64,000 nt of DNA from Mytilus edulis (Eukaryota). The position numbers were made by a program, and so were the translations under genes. The stretch covers positions 22,940,001 to 23,004,000 of the forward strand of contig NC_092354.1 in NCBI RefSeq assembly GCF_963676685.1, written 5' to 3'. The notes beneath the pieces were generated by a model. That model saw only the letters and a list, made by a program, of their open reading frames with translations, was not told the origin of the DNA and searched no databases. Position 1 is the first letter of the stretch. Each line of letters starts with the position of its first letter. Below are positions 11,526-62,379 of the stretch, one piece after another.

Positions 11526-13094
11526 TTGTTAAATACATCTGAAGCTCAATTAAACATTTCAAAAGCCTTACTCATTATGCCAGATGAAACTGTAATAAAA
11601 TTAAAGAAAATACAAAGCAATAGTTGCGCTTTAATTAGATTAAAAGAAAGAATGTTAGTACCCGCTAATACTGAAACAGCTTTCAAAATTACAGTTCCAA
11701 CAAATATGAGGGAAAATAACATGTTAAAAGAACCTAATGCACATCTAGGAAAGCAAGGAATTTTAATATCCAATGCATTAGTAAATGCCAAAGATAATAA
11801 AGTTGTCATTTCTGCCCTTAATTGTACAGATTGGGATATAACACTGAAAAAAATAAAAGTGGTAGGAAATATTCAGTTTGTTAGTAAAATTTCTGAGTCT
11901 TTAGGGTGTAACAAATCAGATACTGAGGATTTAAAATGTATGCTTGAAAAGGTGTCCTCTAAACTTTCGAAAGAACAAAAAGAGAAAATAAAAAGGCTAA
12001 TTTTTAATTTTCAAGATATTTTTCTGGGACCCGAAGGGAAATTAGGTCGCACTGAACTTGTGAAACATACTATTGACACTGGTGATGCCAGGCCCATTAG
12101 AATTCCTCCGAGGAGAGTTGCTTTGGCTCAAAAAGACATTATAAGTCAGGAAATTGAAAAAATGTTAAAAGATGACATTATAGAGCCCAGCAATAGTCCA
12201 TGGAGTTCCCCTGTCTTGCTCTGTAAGAAAAAGGACCAGTCTTGGAGGTTCTGCATTGACTATAGAGGCCTTAACCTCTTGACCCGCAAGGATGCCTACC
12301 CTTTGCCCCGTATTGATACTTCTTTAGATTCATTGGGAGGAAATAAATGGTTTAGTACGATCGACCTAGCTTCCGGTTACTGGCAATGTTTAGTAGATGA
12401 AAAAGATAGACCAAAAACAGCCTTTTCTTGTCATCGTGGATTATTTCAATTTAAAGTAATGCCTTTTGGCCTGTGCAATGCACCTAGCTGTTTTGAGAGA
12501 CTTATGGAAATTGTATTACAAGGTTATCAGTGGGAAAGATGTTTATGTTATTTAGACGATGTTATCATTTTTGGACCTACTTTTGAAAAAGCACTTGAAA
12601 ATGTGGAATTTGTTTTTGAAAGATTTAGGCAAGCAAATTTAAAATTAAAACCCAAAAAGTGTTCTTTATTTCAACATCAAGTTTTATTTTTGGGACATTT
12701 AATTACGGACGAAGGCATTGCTTGTGATCCCTCAAAAATTGAAGCTGTACGTGATTGGCCTACCCCTAAAAATATCAATGAGGTTCGTAGCTTCTTAGGA
12801 CTAGCAGGATATTACAGACGTTTTATTCCTGAATTTTCGGAAATTGCCTCTACTCTCACTCATTTAACTAAAAAGGGGATACGGTTTGAATGGACCACAC
12901 AGTGTCAAGAGTCTTTTGAATGTCTAAAAGGCAAATTAATATCTGCTCCTATTTTAAATTATCCCTCAGAAACTGGTCAGTTTATTTTAGATACTGACGC
13001 CAGTGGACATGCCATTGGTGCAGTTCTTTCACAAATCCAAAATGGCGAAGAAAAAGTTCTTGCCTATGCCAGTAAAATGTTAAGTGACACCCAG
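11526..13094 (+). CDS. pol: Gypsy pol part 1: post-protease linker, reverse transcriptase, RNase H start
   Basis: SPWSSP, RFCIDYR, DAYPLP, DLASGYWQ, MPFGLCNAP, YLDD, FLGLAGYYRRFI, DTDAS; the last 30 aa of the listed ORF read into the HINE. Confidence 0.95.
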
Positions 13095-13868
13095 AACAAG
13101 AGGCTGTCACAACGACAGCAAACCGGATTTATTAATATTTATTTGTGTCCTGGCAATATCACAAGAACCATTACTGATGAATGGTGAAAGTGAAAATCGT
13201 CAATATCAAATTTGACCTCCATTTTGTCATCAGTATCAACATCTTAAAATTTGAAAAGCTTAGATTGAATGGTTCATTAGTAAATGCAACAACTTGAATG
13301 GAAACGCCATTTCACAATCTTTCAAGAACCATAACTCCTGAACAGTAAAAGTCAAAATCGTCATAATTGAACTTGACTTTTAATTTGCCATCAGTAACAA
13401 CATATAAAAATTTCAAAAGCTTTGGTTGAATGGTTCATGAGAAAATGCACGGACACGACTGGAAACACCATTTTTCAATCTTTCAAGAACCATAACTCCT
13501 GAACGGTAAAAGTCAAAATCGTCATTATTGAACTTGACCTCCATTTTGTCATCAGTAACAACATATTAAAATTTGGGAAGCTTAGGTAGAACAGTTCATG
13601 GGTAAATGCACGGACACGACTGTAAACTCCATTTTTCAATCTTTCAAGAACCATAACTCCTGAACGGTAAAAGTCAAAATCGCCATTATTGAACTTGACC
13701 TTCATTTAGTTGTCAGTAACAACATATTAAAAATTTAAAAGCTTTGGTTGAACGGTTCATGAGTTAATGCACGGACAACATTTGATTCCCAAACCGCCCG
13801 CCCGACCGACCGCCCGCCGTACATCCCCAAATCAATAACCGACATTTTTGTCACAAAAATCCGGTTAA
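13095..13868 (-). mobile_element. HINE family 1 inserted in Gypsy RNase H
   Basis: Hairpin GCTGTC-ACAAC-GACAGC, subTIRs AACCGGATTT / AAATCCGGTT, (CCGC)n microsatellite, 161-bp internal repeats; removal restores ...DTQKNYCTT. Confidence 0.92.
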
Positions 13869-15696
13869 AAACTATTGTACTACTTACGGGGAACTTTTGG
13901 CAGTATTAACCTTTGTGAAACATTTTAGACACTATCTGATAGGTCAAAATTTTAAAATAAGGAGTGATCATGCTTCCTTAAGATGGCTTAAGAATTTTAA
14001 AAATCCAGAGGGGATGGTGGCCCGTTGGATATCTGTTTTAGAATCCTATAATTTTATTATAGAACACAGAAAAGGCAGTCAACATACAAATGCTGATGCC
14101 TTATCTAGGAAACCATATCGACTTTGTAAAAGGGACGATTGTCCCGGATGTGATAAAGATAAAGATTGTGTAAAAGTTAACCCTTTAATGGCTGAAAATG
14201 ATCAGGATTTAGACAATACAATTCCGTATGAGGATAATTTAGAACAAAATGAAACAATACCCCATACTGAGGAGTCTGATGATATTAATGAAAGTCTAGA
14301 TTTTTCAAATTGGTTGAGAATATGGTCTAATGAAGAAATTAAATCATGGCAAGAAAAGGATTCAGATTTAATTAAAATAATTCAATTAAAAACTCAGTCT
14401 GATGAAAAACCTAGTCGTGAACAAGTGTCTGGTTCTACATATGAAATTAGGAAACTATGGAGTGGCTGGGAATTGCTAGAAATAGTAAATGGAATTTTGT
14501 ATAAACAATATGAAAAATCTAGTATAAATAGTCTGGTATTAGTAGTCCCCAAAGAATTAAGAGTTAAAATCATGAGGGAACTTCATAACAATAGAATAGC
14601 TGGTCATTTAGGTAGACACAGAACGTTAGAGTCCATTAGGCGAAGGTTCTATTGGCCTGGTATGTCTTCAGATGTAGGCTCATGGGTTAAGGAGTGTTCT
14701 ATTTGTGCCCGAGCAAAACGAGGTCCTGGGTTAGGTCGTTATCCACTTCAGCAATCTCAAGTTGGATTTCCTCTTGATAGAATAGGCATTGACATTGTTG
14801 GTCCTTGTCCTATAACAGAAAATGGAAATGAATATATAATAGTTGTTTCTGATTATTTTACTAAATGGTGTGAAGCATATGCCGTACCTAATCATCACGC
14901 ACTTACAGTGGCAGATAAACTAGTCCCTGAATTTTTCACTAGGTTTGGGATGCCAAAACAAATACATTCTGATCAGGGGAGAGAATTTGAATCTCTATTA
15001 TTTCAAGCTGTTTGTCAACTTTTAGGTATTGAGAAAACTAGAACAACCCCCTATAGACCCCAAAGTGATGGTTTAGTTGAGAGATTTAATAAAACTCTGC
15101 AAATCATGTTATCCTCCTTTGTTAATAAAAACAGGAATGATTGGGATGACCATTTACCCTATCTTCTCATGGCATATAGAGCAAGTGAGCATGATAGCAC
15201 AGGGGTTACCCCTTATAAAATGATGTTTGGACGGGAAATGGCCTATCCTTTAGATATCTTAGCAGGTAACCCAAAGTCTCGAGAAAATTTATGTCCTATT
15301 GAGTACGTTAGTTGGCTAAAACATAGTTTTGATATAACTTTTAATTTTGCAAAAGATAATTTGTCAAAAGCTGCCACTAGACAGAAAAATACTTATGATA
15401 GGGGCATTAAACCTAGAAACTATGAAATAGGAGATTTTGTGTGGAGATGGTATCCTCCTACTGCTCACATTAAATTGGGTTTAGGATGGATTGGGCCTTA
15501 TAAAGTTCTTCATAAATTTTCTGAAGTGACTTATAAAATTAAAGAGAACCCAAACAGTAGGGAAATAATAGTCCATGTAGATCACCTAAAACCTTATCTA
15601 GATAATACTATTTTTACAACCCCAATACCCCCTAGACAATCCAGGTGTGGTCGAGCCATTAAGAAGCCATTAAGGTACTCCCCAGATGTAATATAG
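13867..15696 (+). CDS. pol: Gypsy pol part 2: RNase H end and integrase (HHCC, DDE, GPY)
   Basis: YCTTYGELLAV, RSDH, NADALSR, H..AGHLG..CSIC, IGIDIVGP, HSDQG, GLVER, WIGPYKV. Confidence 0.95.
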   Translation, partial: KNYCTTYGELLAVLTFVKHFRHYLIGQNFKIRSDHASLRWLKNFKNPEGMVARWISVLESYNFIIEHRKGSQHTNADALSRKPYRLCKRDDCPGCDKDKDCVKVNPLMAENDQDLDNTIPYEDNLEQNETIPHTEESDDINESLDFSNWLRIWSNEEIKSWQEKDSDLIKIIQLKTQSDEKPSREQVSGSTYEIRKLWSGWELLEIVNGILYKQYEKSSINSLVLVVPKELRVKIMRELHNNRIAGHLGRHRTLESIRRRFYWPGMSSDVGSWVKECSICARAKRGPGLGRYPLQQSQVGFPLDRIGIDIVGPCPITENGNEYIIVVSDYFTKWCEAYAVPNHHALTVADKLVPEFFTRFGMPKQIHSDQGREFESLLFQAVCQLLGIEKTRTTPYRPQSDGLVERFNKTLQIMLSSFVNKNRNDWDDHLPYLLMAYRASEHDSTGVTPYKMMFGREMAYPLDILAGNPKSRENLCPIEYVSWLKHSFDITFNFAKDNLSKAATRQKNTYDRGIKPRNYEIGDFVWRWYPPTAHIKLGLGWIGPYKVLHKFSEVTYKIKENPNSREIIVHVDHLKPYLDNTIFTTPIPPRQSRCGRAIKKPLRYSPDVI

Positions 15697-28624: not shown

Positions 28625-28924
28625 ATTTTCTAATGCCTACCATCTGCTCTGCACCTCAGGTATCGGAAATGTGCTTCTGAATGCAATAAAAGTGCAAGTC
28701 CGGAAAGGTGCAAATTATACTTTGAGACTTGACGGTGCAAGCATCGAATCACTGAATTTATCATCTTTTTTTTGGCACATTTTCAAAAGTTTCAGGCGGA
28801 TTTAGGGATATTCTTTCGGACTCAAAACCACTTCAAATTTTAACACAGACAAACTGTATTGGAATTGTTTCGGCTACCATTGAAAATAATCTCATCATAG
28901 ATACCAGGACTAAATGTAGTATAT

Positions 28925-28968
28925 ACGCCAGACGCGCGTTTCGTTTATAAAAGACTCATCAGTGACGC
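28925..28968 (-). ncRNA. Minimal type I hammerhead ribozyme (family 1), within a retrozyme-like fragment ~28885-29070
   Basis: Minus strand GCGTCA CTGATGA GTCT-TTTAT-AAAC GAAA C GCGC G TC TGGCGT; one mismatch in stem II. Confidence 0.85.
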
Positions 28969-29069
28969 TCGAATCCCAAAAAGTTAAAAAGGCCAAATAT
29001 AGTACGAAGTTGAGGAGTGTTGAGGACCAAAATTACTAAAAGTTTTGTCAAATACAGCTCATTTCTACG

Positions 29070-49695: not shown

Positions 49696-51899
49696 TTGAT
49701 TTATTGATTGTTGGTTGCTTTACGCCGCATTAGCACAAAGAGGCTATATCGCGGCGAGAGCTAATTCAAATATTTTTACAATTTAAAGCATACTTTTAAA
49801 ATAAGACAAAAAGTCCTTCAATATACTAAAATTCTAGACTAAAGCAAAATGATTATATACAAATAAAAATCAACAGTAAAATAACGTGATAAAAATTAAA
49901 AACGATTTAAATATCATAACATTTTCATATTCTATAATAAATTCCAATTTCTTTTAAAAATGCAACAATATTTGTAAATGGAACATTATTGAATAAATCA
50001 TACATATTATTGACATTGAAATGCTTCTTACGAATATCAGCAAAGTCAATACAATTAATTAAAACATGTTTAATAGTATACTTGCAGTTGCAAGGAACAC
50101 ATTGTGGTTCATCTTCATTTTTAACCGGATTTTTGTGACAAAAATGTCGGTTATTGATTTGGGGATGTACGGCGGGCGGCCGGGCGGTCGGGCGGGCGGG
50201 CGGGCGGCAATCAAATGTTGTCCGTGCATTAACTCATGAACCGTTCAACCAAAGCTTTTAAAATTTTAATATGTTATTACTGACAACTATACGAAGGTCA
50301 AGTTCAATAATGGCGATTTTGACTTTTACCGTTCAGGAGTTATGGTTCTTGAAAGGCGGCAATCAAATGTTGTCCGTGCATTAACTCATGAACCGTTCAA
50401 CCAAAGCTTTTAAAATTTTAATATGTTAATACTGACAACTATACGAAGGTCAAGTTCAATAATGGCGATTTTGACTTTTACCGTTCAGGAGTTATGGTTC
50501 TTGAAAGGCGGCAATCAAATGTTGTCCGTGCATTAACTCATGAACCGTTCAACCAAAGCTTTTAAAATTTTAATATGTTATTACTGACAACTATACGGAG
50601 GTCAAGTTCAATAATTGCGATTTTGACTTTTACCGTTCAGGAGTTATGGTTCTTGAAAGATTGAAAAATGGAGTTTTCAGTCGTGTCCGTGCATTTACTC
50701 ATGAACTGTTCTACCAAAGCTTCCCAAATTTTAATATGTTGTTACTGATGACAGAATGGAGGTCAAGTTTAATAATGACGATTTTGACTTTTACCGTTCA
50801 GGAGTTATGGTTCTTGAAAGATTGAAAAATGGAGTTTCCAGTCGTGTCCGTGCATTTATGCATGAACTGTTCTACCAAAGCTTCCGAAATTTTAATATGC
50901 TGTTACTGATGACAAAATGGAGGTCAAGTTCAATAATGACGATTTTGACTTTTACCGTTCAGGAGTTATGGTTCTTGAAAGATTGAAAAATGGTGTTTCC
51001 CGTCGTGTCCATGCATTTTCTCATGAACCATTCAACCAAAGCTTTTGAAATTTTAATATGTTGTTACTGATGACAAAATAGAGGTCAAGTTCCATAATGA
51101 CGATTTTGACTTTTACTGTTCAGGAGTTATGGTTCTTGAAAGATCGTAAAATGGCGTTTCCATTCACGTTGTTGCATTTACTCATAAACCATTCAATCTA
51201 AGCTTTTCAAATATTATTATTTCAAAATGTTGATACTGATGACAAAATAGAGGTCAAATTTGATATTGATGATTTTCACTTTCACCATTCATCAGTAATG
51301 ATATCATCTGATATTGCCAGGACACAAATAAATGTAAATAAATCCGGTTTGCTGTCGTTGTGACAGCCTCTTGTTTAAAAGATACTCGTGTGTTATTCTA
51401 GTATGACCAATACGACATCTAGTAATAACACACTGATCTTTTCTGCACATAATATTATTAAAAGGTTTGCCTAAATTAGGTTTAATTTCATGCAATTTAT
51501 TATCATCTTTTTTACTCCATTTATTTTTCAATATATTGAAAACATATTCTCTAATATTAGATTTAAAATCAGTATATGGTATATCACAGTTAGATAGAGG
51601 GTCACCCAGGGCATTCTTTGCCTCAAGGTCTACAGCTGTGTTTCCAAGGATTCCAACATGACTCGGAACCCATAGAAATATTATTTCTTTCAGAAGAATT
51701 TTTAAATTCCTCATTACATACAAAATTTTGAGAATTGTTGGGTTTTTAATTTTAGTATTTCGTATAGCTTGTAAGCATGAAAGTGAATCCGAACATATAA
51801 TAAATTTTGATTTATCTGAAGAAGCAATAAATTTCAAAGCCAAAATTATTGCTTCTGCTTCAGCAGTAAAGATGGATGCATCAGATGGCAAACGGAGAG
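49696..51899 (-). mobile_element. 5'-truncated I/Nimb-clade LINE (RNase H + CCHC) with TSD, interrupted by HINE-1
   Basis: SIFTAE, SDSLS, WVPSHVGILGN, RCRIGHT, CVPC..TIKHVLINC, stop at 49925; (CAAT)n tail; 13-bp TSD GCCCTGCTGTTGA at 49683-49695 and 51900-51912. Confidence 0.93.
50121..51375 (+). mobile_element. HINE family 1, second copy with expanded internal array
   Basis: Same termini as 13095-13868; removal restores HEYLL-KNEDEPQC. Confidence 0.93.
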
Positions 51900-53039
51900 G
51901 CCCTGCTGTTGACATTTCCTCTTTAGTATTATCTGTTTCTGTAATAAACTCAACAGAAAGAGTTACTGTAGTTCAAATAACTCGTCAACTGAACGATACT
52001 ACGAATCAGTGTCAAATGAGTGTCGGAATTAGGGCAGGAGGGAAGGAGGTATATTTGCATCCATTTGCCCTATGGTTTGTACTTTTTGTCCATTACTCCC
52101 TCCATAATATTACTATTTTAGCACCTCATTTTTGGCCCATTTTTCTATTATTTATACTTTGGCCATTATTCTCTTGTTCTGTAAACCTCAATTCACACAG
52201 ACCAATGGGAAATGGGTTGTCGGACCAATGGGTAATCGGGGGTGTCGGACCAATGGATAACAACTGGATAAAAACGTGTTAATGACGTTGTGTTGTAAAA
52301 GCAATATAAAGCTTCTCAATGATCAAAATTGGTGTTTGTCAAACTGCTATATAACCAGTGTAATTTTTCTGACAAAACGGTTGGTTCAAAATTTTTCAAA
52401 TTTTTATAGTTTTGTTAAAGGGTCAAAGTAAATACTTTGACAAAATTTTATGAAAATTAAACGAGCCAAATTAATTTTAGTGAAATAGGTGGGTACCACC
52501 TTAAAGTGAGTCCAACAATTATTTCATGATCTATCTTTATATCTGAATATCGGACCCATTTGCTTAATTTATAAATGTGACAATTTTTAAAATTTCCCTT
52601 ACATATATACTGTACTGTCATAGATATAAGAAGATAGGGTGTGTTCCATTCAATAACAATTTATAAAACTCAACCATTATAACCCCATGTCAAACACTCC
52701 AACCTAGAGGGCCAGTTCATTTGTAGTCCAGGTTTCCATCCTCTAGAAGGGCTGCTGTCGTGAGCTTTTGAATCCATTCTATCCAGGTTTGTTTTCGAAG
52801 TTTACCATCTCCTAGATTAGTTGCCTTACTAGGCTACGACTCTCATCTAACCGCCTATTTACCTATAGCTGAACAAGGTTGATGAGTGCTAGGGTATGTC
52901 CACACAACTGTGGGTCTACACACTGCATCTCTAGGGCCCTTGCTGCTCCGAGATCTCCTGCAGTTTAGCCTGAGGTACTAAGACCCCAGTTTACGTGCAC
53001 TATCGCGGGAGTCTTGATAGTGTAGAAGCTATGTACTGG

Positions 53040-53430: not shown

Positions 53431-53589
53431 ATTCATGTACTTTAAACTTTTAATTTATCAAAAAACGAAGGATTTTCTTATCCAAGGCATAGATTAAGAT
53501 AGCCGTTTTTGGCACAACTTTTTGGAATTTTAGGTTCTCAATGCTCTTCAACTTTGTACTAGTTTGGCTTTATGGATATTTTGATATGA

Positions 53590-53633
53590 GCGTCACTGAT
53601 GAGTCTTATGAAGACGAAACGCGCGTCTGGCGT
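53590..53633 (+). ncRNA. Minimal type I hammerhead ribozyme (family 1), intact, within a retrozyme-like fragment ~53468-53668
   Basis: Stem I GCGTCA/TGGCGT, CTGATGA, stem II GTCTT/AAGAC, GAAA, C-GCGC-G, GTC cleavage after 53627. Confidence 0.92.
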
Positions 53634-54329
53634 ACTAAATTATAATCCTGGTACCTTTGATAACTATTTGCATACTTAGAATTACAAAAAGGCAAAACAT
53701 ATCATTATGATAACAAGTTTTTTAAATACTTGTTTAAATATTTATATTTCTAATTTAAGAACATGTACATCAAAAGGATCAAGGTGTGACAAAAGAAAAA
53801 AGGTTTGCATTTAAAACTGACAGAAACAACTGAAGAAGAGATAGATACCTCAAACCAAGAACAGCCGAAGTACCACTGGAAGTTGCAGAAAGTGCATAAC
53901 ATGATGCAATCATCATTCCCACAGGAGCAGATAGAACTTTCATGACTGAGGAAATAATTACTGAGGACAAAGTCTTGAAAACAGCAGATATGTCGAAGAA
54001 GGGTGTAAAAACGAGAGCTGAAAATAAGGAGATCTTAAGAAAACCAGATAAAATATCGGAAAAATTGACAATAGAGTTTGATGATGGGACAAGAGGGGGA
54101 AAAAGTTCCAGAACAGAAGAAAATAGGTAAGAATTAACTAAGGTATCAATGTATCAATATTTATTCATGCTGTTTTATAAATGTAAGAATTAATGGTATG
54201 ATTGTTGATGATAAAACTCTACCAGAGAACTCATGACATATAAAAGTTGATTTAAGAAAAATATATACTCTCTTTCCAAAATATTTCAGAGGTCAGTCAA
54301 AATGAGGTTCGTATCAGTATTTAGAAAGC

Positions 54330-58038: not shown

Positions 58039-60320
58039 GCACTATACCACTTTTTCATAGAGAGGGTGGAAAAAAACTTCAAAATGTATAATAGACGTGC
58101 AGTTACATTTATTGGTGTAACTCACCATGCTAACAGATGACCCAGAGTCAGTAATGTGTTTATGCATACATTGTAAAGGTTTATTTGTTTCAAAAGATGA
58201 ATGTACAAAATATTTACTTTAGGTAAAGAACTAAAATCCCCTGTTGAAAAAGCAAAAGAAAAAAGGAAAGAAATAAAAAAAATATATGGTGAACTACAAG
58301 CCTTGAAAATCATTGCTAAAAGTAGGAGATATCATAGTGGAGGAATATGTCGATACCACTAAAGGCATCTCAGAAGAGGACAGAGATGATTTAACAGCGT
58401 ATCTGTGCACTTTCGAGGAATTAAATTTTACTTTCTTGGATATACTATCAATGGTGCATGACACAATTTCCTTTATTATTCATCACTCAGACTCAGATAG
58501 AAAAGGTACAACTCCAGTTTATATTGTAAACTTTAATATACAAATGTCCTTGTGTAACAAACAACATATCTTATCAAAATTCTTAATCAATTACATGAAC
58601 AACTTTGTTAATTGTCAAGCCTGCAACTTTTGTCGCAGAAAGATGACAGATAGTGATCTGGCAGTGGCAGCTGTTTTAACTAACTTCTACAAATGCTTTT
58701 ATTTAGAAGGTTGAAGACCTGATTGCTTTATATACTTTGTATATAGCCGGTGCCGTATGTTTTCGTCTGTCACATGTCCATAGTTCCGGACCTCATTTTT
58801 TGTGGTTCAGTCACTACTTGAAAGAAAAGTCAGAAATTTATTATGTTAATTTCTCTCTTATTATTAGTAAAACTATATTTCAAGGTCCTCATTCCCCTCA
58901 GACAGATTTCACTCGATGTCAACCTCAATGATCAGTGTCATCAGAAATTGACCTCATTTTCATGGTTCAGTAGTTATAGTTACGTTTTTTTGTGTCTGTT
59001 TTTCTTTCACCTTTTGCACAAGGGGTATATTTGGTGCATGGGCTGATTGTAAGGTGTACATGTTCATCTGGCAGGTGTCTTCTGACCTTTGCCTAATTTT
59101 CAAAGATCAGTGGTTACAGTTATTTTTTTTAGATTTTTTTTTATACTATATTTAAAATGTCAACTATGTTTGGTGTATTGAAATATCTTATGAACATGCC
59201 AGTCTTGCAGGTTTTATTTGACTGTGACCTCATTTTCACAGTATTTTTTTTTTTTTTTTATCTATTTTCTTAAACTAAATGCACTAGATTAACTGTATGT
59301 GTTGTACAAAAGGGATGTAAAAGGGTTACCTCATCATCCTGTCACGAATGTAAACAAACCAGGAAAAGTACGGGTAGTTTTTGACTGCGCAGCTAAATAT
59401 CAAAGAATATCACTCAACAGTAAACTCTTACAAGGACCTGATCTCATTAACAGTTTGGTTGGTGTTTTAATTAGATTTAGACAGGAGCAGATAGCCTTAT
59501 CAGCCGACATCGAAGCTATGTTCCATCATGTTCGTGTGCAAGAGGAGGACTGTGATGCCTTGCTTTTTCTAAAGTGGCCTAACGGTGACTTAAACCAGAA
59601 ACCCAGAAGTTATTGCATGCAGGTACATTTGTTTGGTGCTACATCGTCACCAAGTTGTGCAGGATATGCATTAAAACGGACAGCAAGAGATTATTCCCAT
59701 CTTTTTTATCCGGAAGTATCTACTACAGTAGAGACATTTTTTAATGTTGACGATTGTCTGAAGTCTGTGTCATCCGAGCAGGCAGCTATTTAACTCGCTA
59801 TTGACTAAGAGTCACTTATGAAAATGTTACCTTATGGGTGGGTTCCGACTAACACAATTGGTCAGTAATAGTAGAGATGTATTAAAAGCTATACCAGAGT
59901 CTGCACTTGCTCCTGCTGTAGTAAATCTTGGCCCTGGAGATGTGCTGCCGAACGATAAGGCCCTTGGTGTAATTTGGGATGTCAATGAAGATAAAATTAG
60001 GTTAAAGGTAAAATTAACAGATAAACCGTTAACTAGACGTGGTATATTGTCAATTGTAAGTTCAATATTTGATCTGTATTGAAAGTTTGTCTGTGAATCG
60101 CTGTTTTCGACCAGAGGAATTTCAACACATTAAGAACGCTCAATTGCACCTTTTCAACGATGGGATATAACTTGGTTATGGAGCGTGTGCCTATCTGAGA
60201 CTAGTTGATGGCAATGACAAAATTACTTGCTCTTTAATCTTAGAAAGGCACGACTAGCATCAATTAAACAGATGTCAATACCAAGACTTGAATTATCAGG
60301 AGCTGTCACTGCATGCCGCT

Positions 60321-60702
60321 TGCAACAAAATTGGTACCGTTGATTTTATTACTACCACTGGGTCGATGCCTCTGCTGGTGGACTATTAGTCCCCGAGGGT
60401 ATCACCAGCCCAGTAGCCAGTACTTCGGTACTGGCATGAAAATACGGATTTTTTTGTGTAATTAAAATTTGCTGTTACAAAATATTAAAAATTATTATAA
60501 ATTAAGGAATGTATCTCCCTCGTGCACAGCTCTGATTCCTTTCACGAATTTGGCTATACTTTTTGGACCTTTTGGATTATAGCTCTTCATCTTTTATATA
60601 AGCTTTGGATTTCAAATATTTTGGCCACGAGCATCACTGAAGAGACATGTATTGTCGAAATGCGCATCTGGTGCAACAAAATTGGTACCGTTGATTTTAT
60701 TA
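60321..60702 (+). mobile_element. Non-LTR retrozyme insertion (351-nt unit + 31-nt terminal redundancy)
   Basis: Direct repeat TGCAACAAAATTGGTACCGTTGATTTTATTA at 60321-60351 and 60672-60702; removal restores Pao GAVTACRL-YQILNDE. Confidence 0.9.
60631..60674 (+). ncRNA. Minimal type I hammerhead ribozyme (family 2), intact
   Basis: Stem I GCATCA/TGGTGC, CTGAAGA, stem II GACA/TGTC, GAAA, T-GCGC-A, ATC cleavage after 60668. Confidence 0.92.
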
Positions 60703-62379
60703 TACCAAATCCTGAATGATGAACTTGAAATAAAGGTTGATAACGTTACCTTCTGGACAGACTCGATTGTAGTGTTGGGCTACATTAGAAATACATCACG
60801 GCGATTCAAAACCTTTGTAGGTAATAGATTAAGCATAATTCACAATACAACTAGTGTATACCAATGGCGTCACGTATATTCGCCTTCGAATCCCGCGGAC
60901 ATAGCATCAAGAGGAATAGACGCTGTTGATAGTAAGAAACTAAATATATACTTAAATGGTCCAAATTTTCTCTTGGAAGATTCAAAATACTGGCCACAAG
61001 ACTTACGCAATGAGCTACAAGAGGTAACTGAAAATGACACCGAACTTAAGAATGAGGTGGTGATCCATGCTATGACAAACAACACCACTGATTATCTAAT
61101 GAACTATTTCTTCGACTGGACAAAACTACTACGAACAACGGCGTGGTTGATTAGGTTCAAGTTTTATTGCAGACAACGATACCTAAATCATTAAGTTCAG
61201 TGCAGAACTGGTGATCTCACTTTGTCAGAACTGAAAATGGCTACCAATGTAATATCAGTCAATGTACATTCAACTTACTTCAAACACGAAATAATCAAAT
61301 TGAAGAAGGATACGCCCGTGAAAAAAGACAGCCGTATTGCTTCTCTTAATCCTGTACTCGATAATGAGCTTATCCGAGCAAAAGGACGCTTAAGTACCTC
61401 TAACCATGATGAATACCCCATAATCCTTCCCGATAATCATTATGTTACTTCGTTAATTGTTCGTTTCTATCACGAAAATCAGGGTCACGTAGGAAGACAA
61501 CAGGTGCTTGCAGCCACACGTATGAAATACAGGATTTTAAAAGGACCTAGTCTTGTTAAGAAAGTAATCGGATGCTGTATTCCATGTAAACGTCAACACC
61601 GTCCACTCTGCGTACAACAGATGGCACCTCTTCTTGATGAACAGATAACTGCTGAAAACCCCCGTTAACATTTGTCGGAAACGACTATTTTTGGGACCCC
61701 TTTTGGTAAAGTTAGGTCGTTCACACGTAAAAAAGATATGGTTGCCTATTTACATGTCTCACAACCAGAGCAGTGCATCTAGAAGTGGCCCACACCTTAA
61801 CCATGAAGTCATTTTTATCCGCTTTTCAACGCTTTATAAGCCGACGAGGTGTACCAAAAAAGATGTACAGCGATAATGGAACTAATCTTGTAAGCAGAGA
61901 CAGTGAGCTACGTAAATCAATTAAAGAATGGAACCTATCAAAAATTGGAAGACAACAGGAGATAGAATGGCGTTTTAATCCACCTTTAGCAAGTCACATG
62001 GGTGGTTCATAGAAAATTGAAATCGTGATTTTGTCGTCATATGTTTCACCATATTATTGTATTTCATTAAAGGGATCAGAAGTTAAATGGTAGTTCCTGC
62101 GAGAAATTTATGTGATATACATCAAATAACAAAAATATCACATAGTGACTGAATTGCTACTATACAGATCACCACAAAAATAGTTTATGATAAAAAGTTC
62201 TTTATTTTCGGGTTGAAATGAGAGTATGAATCATGTAATTCAAGATGTTCACGATCAAATTCAACTGCAGTCAATAAATAGCCAATTATTTTAATGCAAA
62301 AGAAAGAATTAATCGGTAAGGATTTTTGAAAGCTATCTAATTAGAGTTATGTTCGTCACCGAATTTCCTTATTACTTAA

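What the first reader, a model, noticed from the sequence alone, without database searches (positions are those of the whole stretch)
60321..60702. Hammerhead retrozyme inserted as a 1.09-mer inside a Bel/Pao pol gene, starting at the ribozyme cut site
Seen: a non-coding 382-bp insert interrupts Pao pol (CRL|YQIL). It has a 31-nt terminal direct repeat with a 351-nt period, and that repeat is element sequence, not target sequence. It carries an intact minimal type I hammerhead (60631-60674). Its 5' end maps 3 nt downstream of the position equivalent to the cleavage site (60668/9). Known: non-LTR retrozymes are non-autonomous hammerhead-bearing retroelements that yield small circular RNAs, and have been reported in mussels. 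Inference: this records reverse transcription that ran more than one unit length and ended near a ribozyme-made 5' end, either around a circle or along a partly cleaved multimer.
Basis: partly seen in the sequence, partly recalled or inferred. Interest (0 to 1): 0.85.

Follow-up and report, generated by a model that had tools for sequence, protein, structure and literature searches.

The report
Ordinary mussel hammerhead retrozyme insertion
A 380-base copy of a known mussel "retrozyme" (a small mobile repeat that carries a self-cutting hammerhead RNA) sits in a dead Pao retrotransposon; its start beside the ribozyme cut site looks like chance, because genome-wide these copies share one fixed end and have scattered starts.

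Summary
Window 60321-60702 is a non-coding insert in a degenerate Pao pol. Six empty paralogous Pao copies read ...GCCGCT|TATACC (C R L Y Q I L), so the net insert is 380 bp with a 0-2 bp duplication. The exact 31-nt terminal repeat (period 351) is element sequence. The hammerhead (60631-60674, cut 60668/9) is intact. It differs from the experimentally cleaving mussel retrozyme Mg353 family by four compensatory pair changes and has an unchanged core.

The special reading, a 5' end set by the ribozyme cut, is not supported.
- All 20 other arrays fetched, and 180 genome-wide pattern matches, end at one site (...GATTTTATT[A]). This is 33-34 nt past the cut and directly before a conserved 58-nt hairpin.
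- The 5' ends of 35 arrays are spread evenly over the unit.
- The 7-phase window at the cut site holds 4 true 5' ends, against 3, about 10 and about 27 in three control windows.

The pattern fits Penelope-like target-primed reverse transcription with a fixed internal start. Array-wide private variants indicate that each array was copied from a single unit, as expected for a circular template.

The element is a member of a published class. The insertion itself is ordinary. Another window of this genome had already noted the hairpin.

The parts
60321..60700 (+). Retrozyme insertion, 1.08-1.09 units of a 351-nt repeat (boundaries uncertain by 1-2 nt: 60321-60700 or 60322-60701)
   Evidence: Empty Pao paralogues. 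Genome-wide tandem copies. The unit is 38% GC with no open frame over 79 aa in a dimer.
60321..60351 (+). 5' copy of the terminal redundancy (unit phases 1-31): the tail between the hammerhead and the hairpin, reached on the second pass of reverse transcription
   Evidence: Absent from empty sites.
60672..60702 (+). 3' copy of the terminal redundancy. Its end (...GATTTTATT[A], phases 29-31) is the fixed 3' terminus shared by all insertions, taken here as the start site of reverse transcription
   Evidence: 20 of 20 other arrays end at phase 30-35. 180 genome-wide matches of this end followed by non-element sequence. Homologous end in family A copies.
60631..60674 (+). Type I hammerhead core; predicted cut between C60668 and T60669. 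Helix I may extend to about 60619-60681 through an internal loop
   Evidence: Motif scan. Four compensatory pair changes against family A with an invariant core. Family A (Mg353) self-cleaves in vitro at the homologous GUC|UGG (PMC7229834). The dimer fold forms an 8-bp helix III through the palindrome.
60357..60414 (+). Conserved 58-nt hairpin just 3' of the fixed end (preceded by AC-rich ACUACCAC, 60351-60358). Candidate binding site for the reverse transcriptase
Evidence: Only strong stem in the centroid fold. The tail-plus-hairpin module is the only part retained at 76-88% identity in the divergent family.
60415..60434 (+). Second small hairpin (CCAGUAC-UUCG-GUACUGG). Its loop and 3' arm (phases 100-107) are a hot spot of 5' ends genome-wide
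59900..60320 (+). Host: degenerate Bel/Pao pol upstream of the insert (in-frame stops; about 136 nt missing near 60074 relative to paralogues)
60701..61194 (+). Host: Pao pol downstream of the insert (YQILNDEL...FWTDS...)

Best explanation
The insert is one young copy of a mussel non-LTR hammerhead retrozyme, the class described in Mytilus galloprovincialis by Cervera and de la Pena (2020). It was made by target-primed reverse transcription of the Penelope-like kind. The enzyme starts cDNA synthesis at a fixed internal site of the retrozyme RNA (U30/A31 of the unit). That site is 33-34 nt downstream of the hammerhead cut and directly upstream of an AC-rich stretch and a conserved 58-nt hairpin. 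It copies back through the hammerhead and the body and stops at a variable point. In this copy it went once round the unit plus about 30 nt, so the tail is present at both ends. It stopped 3-4 nt short of meeting the cut site a second time, which I take as chance. Because the template must be continuous across the cut site, it was a religated circle or an uncut multimer. Array-wide private variants in longer arrays favour one monomeric circle copied round and round. Shown here: the insert, its limits, the fixed 3' end, the scattered 5' ends, hammerhead covariation, and the single-unit ancestry of arrays. Inferred: which enzyme does it (a Penelope-like element), that the hairpin is its binding site, and that the template is circular.
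For: Insert limits come from six empty Pao paralogues. The unit is 100% identical over 382 nt to copies on two other chromosomes, so the insertion is recent. All 20 other arrays fetched (409-7554 bp, 1.2-21.5 units) end at phase 30-35, while 5' phases run from 26 to 343. Genome-wide there are 180 matches of the 3' end followed by non-element letters and 370 internal junctions, with reversed-pattern controls at 0. Five copies of two other retrozyme subfamilies end at the homologous ...ATT(T/A) just before the hairpin. 5' phases of 35 arrays are uniform, with no excess at the cut site. In nine arrays with 3 or more units, 72 variant columns split into 47 singletons, 23 present in all units and 2 doubletons, and some array-wide variants are private (14/14, 18/18, 6/6). 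No poly(A) or microsatellite tail is present. Direct repeats abutting both junctions appear in only 2 of 20 arrays, and the duplication in the window is 0-2 bp. Published parallels: a Penelope-like reverse transcriptase starts internally in an AC-rich stem-loop downstream of its hammerhead, gives 5' truncations and tandem copies, and does not need ribozyme cleavage (PMC11167929). Circle-templated multimeric cDNA and Penelope-like helpers have been proposed for retrozymes (PMC7229834, PMC7761336). Penelope-type GIY-YIG frames are abundant here, several inside open frames of 700-1053 aa. RNA reads run unbroken across the cut site.
Against: A fixed 3' end with 5' truncation is also what stringent LINE/SINE pairs give. 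Insertion flanks are no more AT-rich than the genome (31-33% against 34% GC), and only a few of the listed 3' flanks are (TA)n, unlike the bias reported for Naiads. The 35-array sample comes from the 40 best-scoring candidates out of 1453 and holds only copies of 382 bp or more. The pattern counts use filters whose pass rates I estimated, and I judged true ends by eye from the matched strings. Short reads cannot tell circles from tandem transcripts, and no read pile-up marks either the cut site or the start site. Single-unit ancestry of arrays could also come from rapid local amplification after a 1.x-unit insertion.
Confidence: 0.7

Rival explanations
1. One reading: the template was a dimeric transcript cut at its upstream hammerhead but not at the internal one. 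The enzyme ran off that ribozyme-made 5' end, and 3-4 nt were lost on joining. The 5' end of this copy would then record ribozyme cleavage.
For: The 5' end lies 3 nt from the cut, which has a prior chance of about 1-3% for one copy. A few other copies start at or next to the cut. These are C7:75711375 (7.1 units, phase 349), C7:54702545 (phase 349), C3:101945312 (4.09 units, phase 1) and a 35-nt tail-only copy at C2:2599929-2599968. All were found by cross-matching the coordinates.
Against: Such starts occur at background frequency: 4 true ends in the 7-phase cut-site window, against 3, about 10 and about 27 in control windows. None of the 20 other fetched arrays starts within 5 nt of the cut. 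Run-off normally reaches the last template base. In the one Penelope-like system tested in vitro, ribozyme cleavage was not needed and uncut RNA was the main substrate (PMC11167929).
Confidence: 0.1
2. The retrozyme is mobilised as a SINE-like passenger of a stringent-type LINE that recognises its 3' tail. The fixed 3' end is then the RNA's real 3' end, not an internal start.
For: A fixed 3' end with variable 5' truncation is the classic LINE signature. LINE-type fragments occur in the window (RNase H/RVT_3 frame at 51304-51915). PMC7229834 leaves LINEs open as helpers.
Against: There is no A-rich or simple-repeat tail, and target duplications are absent or very short. Head-to-tail multimers of up to 21 units here, and about 46 at C3:46034027-46050148, share the same end, so the template continued past that site. 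RNA reads show no pile-up of 3' ends at phase 30/31. Hammerheads and tandem insertion are hallmarks of Penelope-like elements.
Confidence: 0.15
3. A DNA-level event: a piece of a retrozyme satellite array was captured at a break in the Pao copy, or moved by recombination, with no reverse transcription at this site.
For: The element exists as long satellite-like arrays. The junctions have only 0-2 nt of homology.
Against: A random array fragment would not end at the same nucleotide as about 180 or more other dispersed copies.
Confidence: 0.03

Closest known systems
Non-LTR hammerhead retrozymes of Mytilus galloprovincialis (clone Mg353; Cervera and de la Pena, Nucleic Acids Res 2020, PMC7229834)
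   Same: Host group, unit size (351 against about 350-390 bp), low GC and head-to-tail arrays all match. The hammerhead has the same layout, with a 6-nt palindrome as helix III. The tail-plus-hairpin block is shared (ACCACTGGGTCGATGCC...CCAGCCCAGTAG). Family A copies matching Mg353 lie in this window and inside arrays of this family.
   Different: The hammerhead sequence differs at 4 base pairs (all compensatory) and in CUGAAGA against CUGAUGA, and the body is only about 74% identical. I could not tell whether this subfamily is one of the two hammerhead consensus types counted in that paper. Self-cleavage and circles were shown for Mg353-type repeats, not for this subfamily.
Internal initiation by a Penelope-like element (Poseidon of Anolis; Frangieh et al., Mob DNA 2024, PMC11167929), and the Penelope 'tail' and pseudo-LTR structures (Craig et al. 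2021, PMC8557442)
   Same: A fixed cDNA start lies inside the RNA, downstream of a hammerhead and beside an AC-rich stem-loop. Copies show 5' truncation, partial tandems that create terminal repeats, and a terminal redundancy of about 30 nt. Cleavage is not required.
   Different: This element has no ORF. The start is 33-34 nt past the cut, against roughly 85-92 nt in Poseidon. Only one cluster of start sites was seen (phases 30-33). Adjacent inverted copies were not looked for systematically. No enzyme or shared sequence with an autonomous element was shown here.
Hammerhead satellite repeats of newts and salamanders (satellite 2) and other metazoan type I hammerhead repeats
   Same: Tandem repeats of about 330-350 bp carry a type I hammerhead with a very weak helix III that can pair between two copies (general knowledge and PMC7229834; dimer fold).
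   Different: Different hosts and unrelated sequence. Here the dispersed insertions have a defined 3' end, which lets them be read as retrotransposition events.
SINEs mobilised by LINEs
   Same: Short, non-coding and non-autonomous, with a fixed 3' end and 5' truncation.
   Different: This element has no tRNA/5S/7SL head, no A-rich or simple-repeat tail and hardly any target duplication. It forms multimeric insertions and carries a ribozyme.

Membership tests
Metazoan non-LTR retrozyme | Type I hammerhead with the conserved core (CUGANGA, GAAA, UH) and three helices | tested here: met
   Four compensatory pair changes against family A, 98.6% of cells paired, core invariant.
Metazoan non-LTR retrozyme | Head-to-tail repeats of 150-450 bp with low GC and no LTR, PBS, PPT or coding capacity | tested here: met
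   351-nt period in dozens of arrays. 38% GC and longest open stretch 79 aa in a dimer. PBS and PPT were not searched for explicitly.
Metazoan non-LTR retrozyme | Self-cleavage at the predicted site | not testable with these tools
   Shown in vitro only for the related Mg353 repeat (PMC7229834). RNA reads show no pile-up of ends at the cut site.
Metazoan non-LTR retrozyme | Expressed as monomeric circular RNA | tested here: inconclusive
   Transcribed in three RNA runs of a sister species label, sense-biased in one, with reads unbroken across the cut site. Short reads cannot separate circles from tandem transcripts.
Rfam Hammerhead_1 (RF00163) and other Rfam hammerhead models | Score at or above the family's gathering threshold | tested here: not met
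   No hammerhead match at gathering score in the window, or at E<=10 in 60200-60800. The near-absent helix III (2 bp plus GCGC, or intermolecular) is the likely reason.
Non-autonomous passenger of a Penelope-like element | Fixed 3' end from an internal start beside a stem-loop, 5' truncation, partial or multiple tandems | tested here: met
Non-autonomous passenger of a Penelope-like element | Sequence shared with an autonomous Penelope-like element at the recognition module | not tested
GIY-YIG frames are abundant (858 candidates) but their DNA could not be fetched.
Non-autonomous passenger of a Penelope-like element | AT-rich or (TA)n target preference | tested here: inconclusive
   Flanks are 31-33% GC against 34% for the window. 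A few (TA)n flanks appear among 100 listed ends. The window target is CT|TATA.
LINE-dependent SINE | A-rich or simple-repeat 3' tail and target duplications of about 5-20 bp | tested here: not met
   Ends are ...GATTTTATT[A] followed directly by flank. The duplication is 0-2 bp in the window, and 5-7 bp repeats abut both junctions in only 2 of 20 arrays.

The most novel reading that the evidence does not exclude
The genomic footprints of this family would be the first sequence-level link between animal retrozymes and the Penelope-type mechanism. On this reading, a reverse transcriptase binds the conserved hairpin, starts just upstream of it on a single circular RNA, and goes round it. That would give arrays whose units all descend from one monomer. 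Roughly a third of events would stop at the 3' edge of the hairpin module on first meeting it.
Probability: 0.4. Interest if true: 0.6.

Novelty: new member of a known kind. Interest (0 to 1): 0.38.

Why it matters
The insertion itself is routine. It is one of about 300 or more dispersed copies of a retrozyme subfamily, in a host group where retrozymes, their self-cleavage and their circular RNAs are already published.

The family-wide pattern found while checking it is more useful. The 2020 review states that metazoan retrozymes show no conserved motif that points to their helper. Here, three subfamilies share one cDNA start site, placed directly before a conserved hairpin. Arrays carry array-wide private variants.

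Both results are what the published circle-templated, Penelope-like model predicts. They also give concrete substrates for an in vitro test: a defined start nucleotide, the hairpin, and circular against linear RNA.

Tried and rejected
1. Rfam covariance models gave no hammerhead hit. I relied instead on a motif scan, covariation and homology to the published Mg353 ribozyme.

2. A whole-unit fold is not more stable than shuffles (z -1.1). Only the two hairpins stand out.

3. RNA reads show no pile-up of starts or ends at the cut site or at the start site. Circles cannot be told from tandem transcripts, and most reads came from related subfamilies (90-99% alike). One DNA contig skipping the L069 array did not match the array limits and was not used.

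4. The helper search failed. No Penelope-like copy could be read, and neither the window nor the held flanks contain one.

5. Target duplications: a scan of 21 junction pairs found only two convincing short repeats.

6. The search of earlier findings by sequence was blank.

7. The idea that divergent hairpin hits mark autonomous elements was rejected. They are family A retrozyme copies.

8. In scripts I used an in-memory majority reference of retrozyme units only to count variants. It was neither printed nor saved. No consensus of the Pao element was made.

Full report
**What is at the coordinates**

Window 60321-60702 carries an exact 31-nt direct repeat at its two ends, 60321-60351 and 60672-60702, spaced 351 nt apart.

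The flanks belong to a Bel/Pao pol:
- The 32 residues before the insert match Pfam PF05380, Pao retrotransposon peptidase.
- The frame resumes after the insert as YQILNDEL...FWTDS.
- The host copy is dead. It has in-frame stops and lacks about 136 nt near 60074 that the paralogues have.

Six paralogous Pao copies elsewhere in the genome are empty. They read ...GCATGCCGCT|TATACCAAATCC, that is C R L Y Q I L without interruption. From this:
- The 31-nt repeat is not target sequence.
- The net insertion is 380 bp (60321-60700 or 60322-60701).
- At most two T's are duplicated.
- An unplaced contig (C1387) repeats the filled locus at 100% identity and is probably the same locus assembled twice.

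**What the insert is**

The 382-nt stretch finds 1453 candidate places in the 1.37-Gb genome. The 40 that were scored gave 147 matches at 97-100% identity, nearly all of them head-to-tail arrays with a 350-351-nt period on every chromosome. Two copies on other chromosomes are identical over all 382 nt, so the insertion is young.

The unit is 38% GC and has no meaningful open frame.

The genome has 14 large scaffolds, and the repeat matches the published Mytilus retrozymes. Cervera and de la Pena (PMC7229834) report:
- about 5000 type I hammerheads in 350-390-bp tandem repeats;
- self-cleavage of clone Mg353 in vitro (kobs about 0.1 per min);
- abundant circular RNA.

Mg353 and this unit share the hammerhead layout and the block ACCACTGGGTCGATGCC...CCAGCCCAGTAG. 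Their bodies differ: a divergent unit inside one array is 74% identical. I call the Mg353-like repeats family A and the present repeats family B.

**The hammerhead**

Rfam finds nothing. A motif scan finds two complete hammerheads in the window: 60631-60674 (family B) and 53590-53633 (family A).

On an alignment of ten distinct variants from both families, the three-helix model pairs 98.6% of cells. Four pairs change on both sides: one in helix I, two in helix II and one in helix III. CUGANGA, GAAA and UC never vary, and slid controls collapse to 12-49% paired. These are two lineages, so this amounts to four compensatory events rather than many.

Helix III is a 6-nt palindrome. It folds poorly alone but gives an 8-bp intermolecular helix in a dimer, as in other animal hammerhead repeats.

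I fetched 20 other arrays with flanks.
- Every one ends at unit phase 30-35: ...GGTACCGTTGATTTTATT[A], followed by unrelated sequence. This is the same end as the window copy.
- Lengths run from 409 to 7554 bp.
- The 5' ends fall at phases 26, 53, 59, 91, 121, 140, 193, 203, 208, 209, 225, 256, 276, 289, 294, 322, 324, 330, 335 and 343.

Adding the 5' ends readable gives 35 arrays. Their distribution cannot be told from uniform (Rayleigh p 0.40, chi-square p 0.87, KS p 0.39). Apart from the window copy, none starts within 5 nt of the cut (phase 348/349).

Genome-wide pattern counts agree:

| Pattern | Matches |
|---|---|
| 3' end followed by non-element letters | 180 (reversed control 0) |
| Internal junctions | 370 |
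| Start exactly at the cut | 1 |

I then used 32-nt patterns that accept a 5' end anywhere in a 7-phase window:

| Window (phases) | Matches | True ends |
|---|---|---|
| Cut site, 347-3 | 6 | 4 (2 are indel variants) |
| 205-211 | 3 | 3 |
| 256-262 | 26 | about 10 |
| 100-106 | 31 | about 27 |

True ends were judged by eye from the matched strings. Filter pass rates, about 0.2-0.33, are my estimates.

The fixed landmark is the 3' end, 33-34 nt past the cut. The start of this copy 3 nt past the cut is one draw from a broad distribution.

A few copies do start at or beside the cut:
- a 7.1-unit array at C7:75711375;
- a 4.09-unit array at C3:101945312, with the window's phase;
- a 35-nt tail-only copy at C2:2599929-2599968.

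They occur at background frequency (coordinates cross-matched).

**The 3' end is conserved across subfamilies**

Five family A copies also stop at the homologous ...ATT(T/A), directly before the hairpin. They are window 53469-53671, a minus-strand copy near window 28884-28990, and copies in L085, L003 and L078.

In the RNA, the sequence after this point is AC-rich (ACUACCAC), followed by a 58-nt hairpin (60357-60414). That hairpin is the only strong stem in the centroid fold. The tail-plus-hairpin module is the part kept in the divergent family.

This mirrors the one Penelope-like element studied in vitro (PMC11167929):
- reverse transcription starts inside the RNA, in an AC-rich stem-loop downstream of the hammerhead;
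- the RNA 3' of the start is needed;
- 5' truncation occurs;
- multi-copy RNA is the template;
- ribozyme cleavage is dispensable.

Partial tandems and a 30-40-bp terminal extension are the usual look of Penelope-like insertions (PMC8557442).

I could not test that, because no further genome letters could be fetched. The flanks show no marked AT or (TA)n bias. The clade of the helper therefore stays open.

**Circle or multimer**

A copy longer than 34 nt must have been templated by RNA that is continuous across the cut site. A cleaved monomer is therefore excluded for this insert.

In the nine arrays with three or more complete units, 72 variant columns split as follows:
- 47 are present in one unit;
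- 23 are present in all units;
- 2 are present in two units.

Some all-unit variants are private to one array: 14/14 in L068, 18/18 in L072, 6/6 in L082 and 3/3 in L071. Each array thus descends from a single unit.

This is what repeated copying of one monomeric circle predicts, and it matches the model drawn by Cervera and de la Pena. Rapid local amplification of a fresh 1.x-unit insert would look similar, so this is support, not proof.

**Expression**

Three raw RNA runs from a sister species label lay 775-2257 reads on a 1.49-unit copy. One stranded library is sense-biased, and coverage is unbroken across the cut site. No pile-up of ends occurs at the cut or at the start site. Loose ends begin just behind phase 31, as expected for read-through from other arrays with the same end. 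Word shares of 0.89-0.97 in DNA runs under three species labels show that the subfamily is shared among them.

**Verdict**

The general reading (a retrozyme, with reverse transcription of more than one unit) is right. The special claim that the ribozyme cut defines the 5' end is not supported.

The element is a further subfamily of a published class, and the insertion is ordinary. The fixed start beside the hairpin, the single-unit ancestry of arrays and the phase 100-107 hot spot are modest new support for the published circle-plus-Penelope model. They suggest a direct biochemical test.

Noticed in passing
window 53469-53671 (+): A second retrozyme fragment of the Mg353-like family A, about 0.57 unit, with a complete hammerhead at 53590-53633. 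It ends at ...GATAACTATTT, homologous to the fixed end of family B.
   Followed up: yes
window about 28884-28990 (-): A third hammerhead-bearing retrozyme fragment (Mg353 subtype; helix II degraded to GTCTTTTATAAAC; cut after 28931 on the minus strand). It also ends at ...GAGATTATTT, before where the hairpin would start.
   Followed up: partly
genome-wide; unit phases 100-107 = window 60420-60427: A hot spot of 5' ends: 31 pattern matches, about 27 with unrelated upstream sequence, against 3-10 in other 7-phase windows. It lies in the loop and 3' arm of the small hairpin, just past the conserved hairpin module. None of the 35 arrays of 382 bp or more starts there. Two matches pair with a 3' end about 280 nt downstream (C8:16833462/16833727 and C7:85242648/85242914), so at least some are 0.8-unit copies. 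The cause could be a block at the enzyme's own binding site or a transcript start; it is unexplained.
   Followed up: partly
L072:4145-4835 and L085 around 1325 (locus coordinates): Hybrid arrays. Family A units sit inside a 21-unit family B array, with the A-to-B joint at the shared start-site sequence (..CTATTA|TTACTACC..). L085 has an A hammerhead joined to a B tail with part of both tails missing. This could be template switching or recombination between subfamilies.
   Followed up: partly
G000:C2:2599929-2599968: A 35-nt copy consisting only of the tail (phase 347/349 to 30). This is the product expected if the enzyme copies a ribozyme-cleaved linear monomer and runs off its 5' end. Only this single case was seen.
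   Followed up: no
G000:C3:46034027-46050148: The longest array noticed: about 46 regularly spaced units (350 nt apart), ending at the canonical 3' end.
   Followed up: no
window about 60074; G000:C1387:16381-17479: The host Pao copy lacks about 136 nt that five paralogues have. The whole filled locus is repeated at 100% identity on an unplaced contig, probably a duplicate assembly of the same locus.
   Followed up: partly
window 11526-15696 (+): Two long open frames (553 and 599 aa) of a Ty3/Gypsy-type pol: RVT_1, RNase H, integrase zinc-binding domain and core, and the p58 C-terminal domain.
   Followed up: no
L069:853/854 (unit phase 110/111): In two RNA runs, 17 molecules begin and 31 end at this point. 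It may be a homology boundary with family A transcripts or a real RNA end; not resolved.
   Followed up: no
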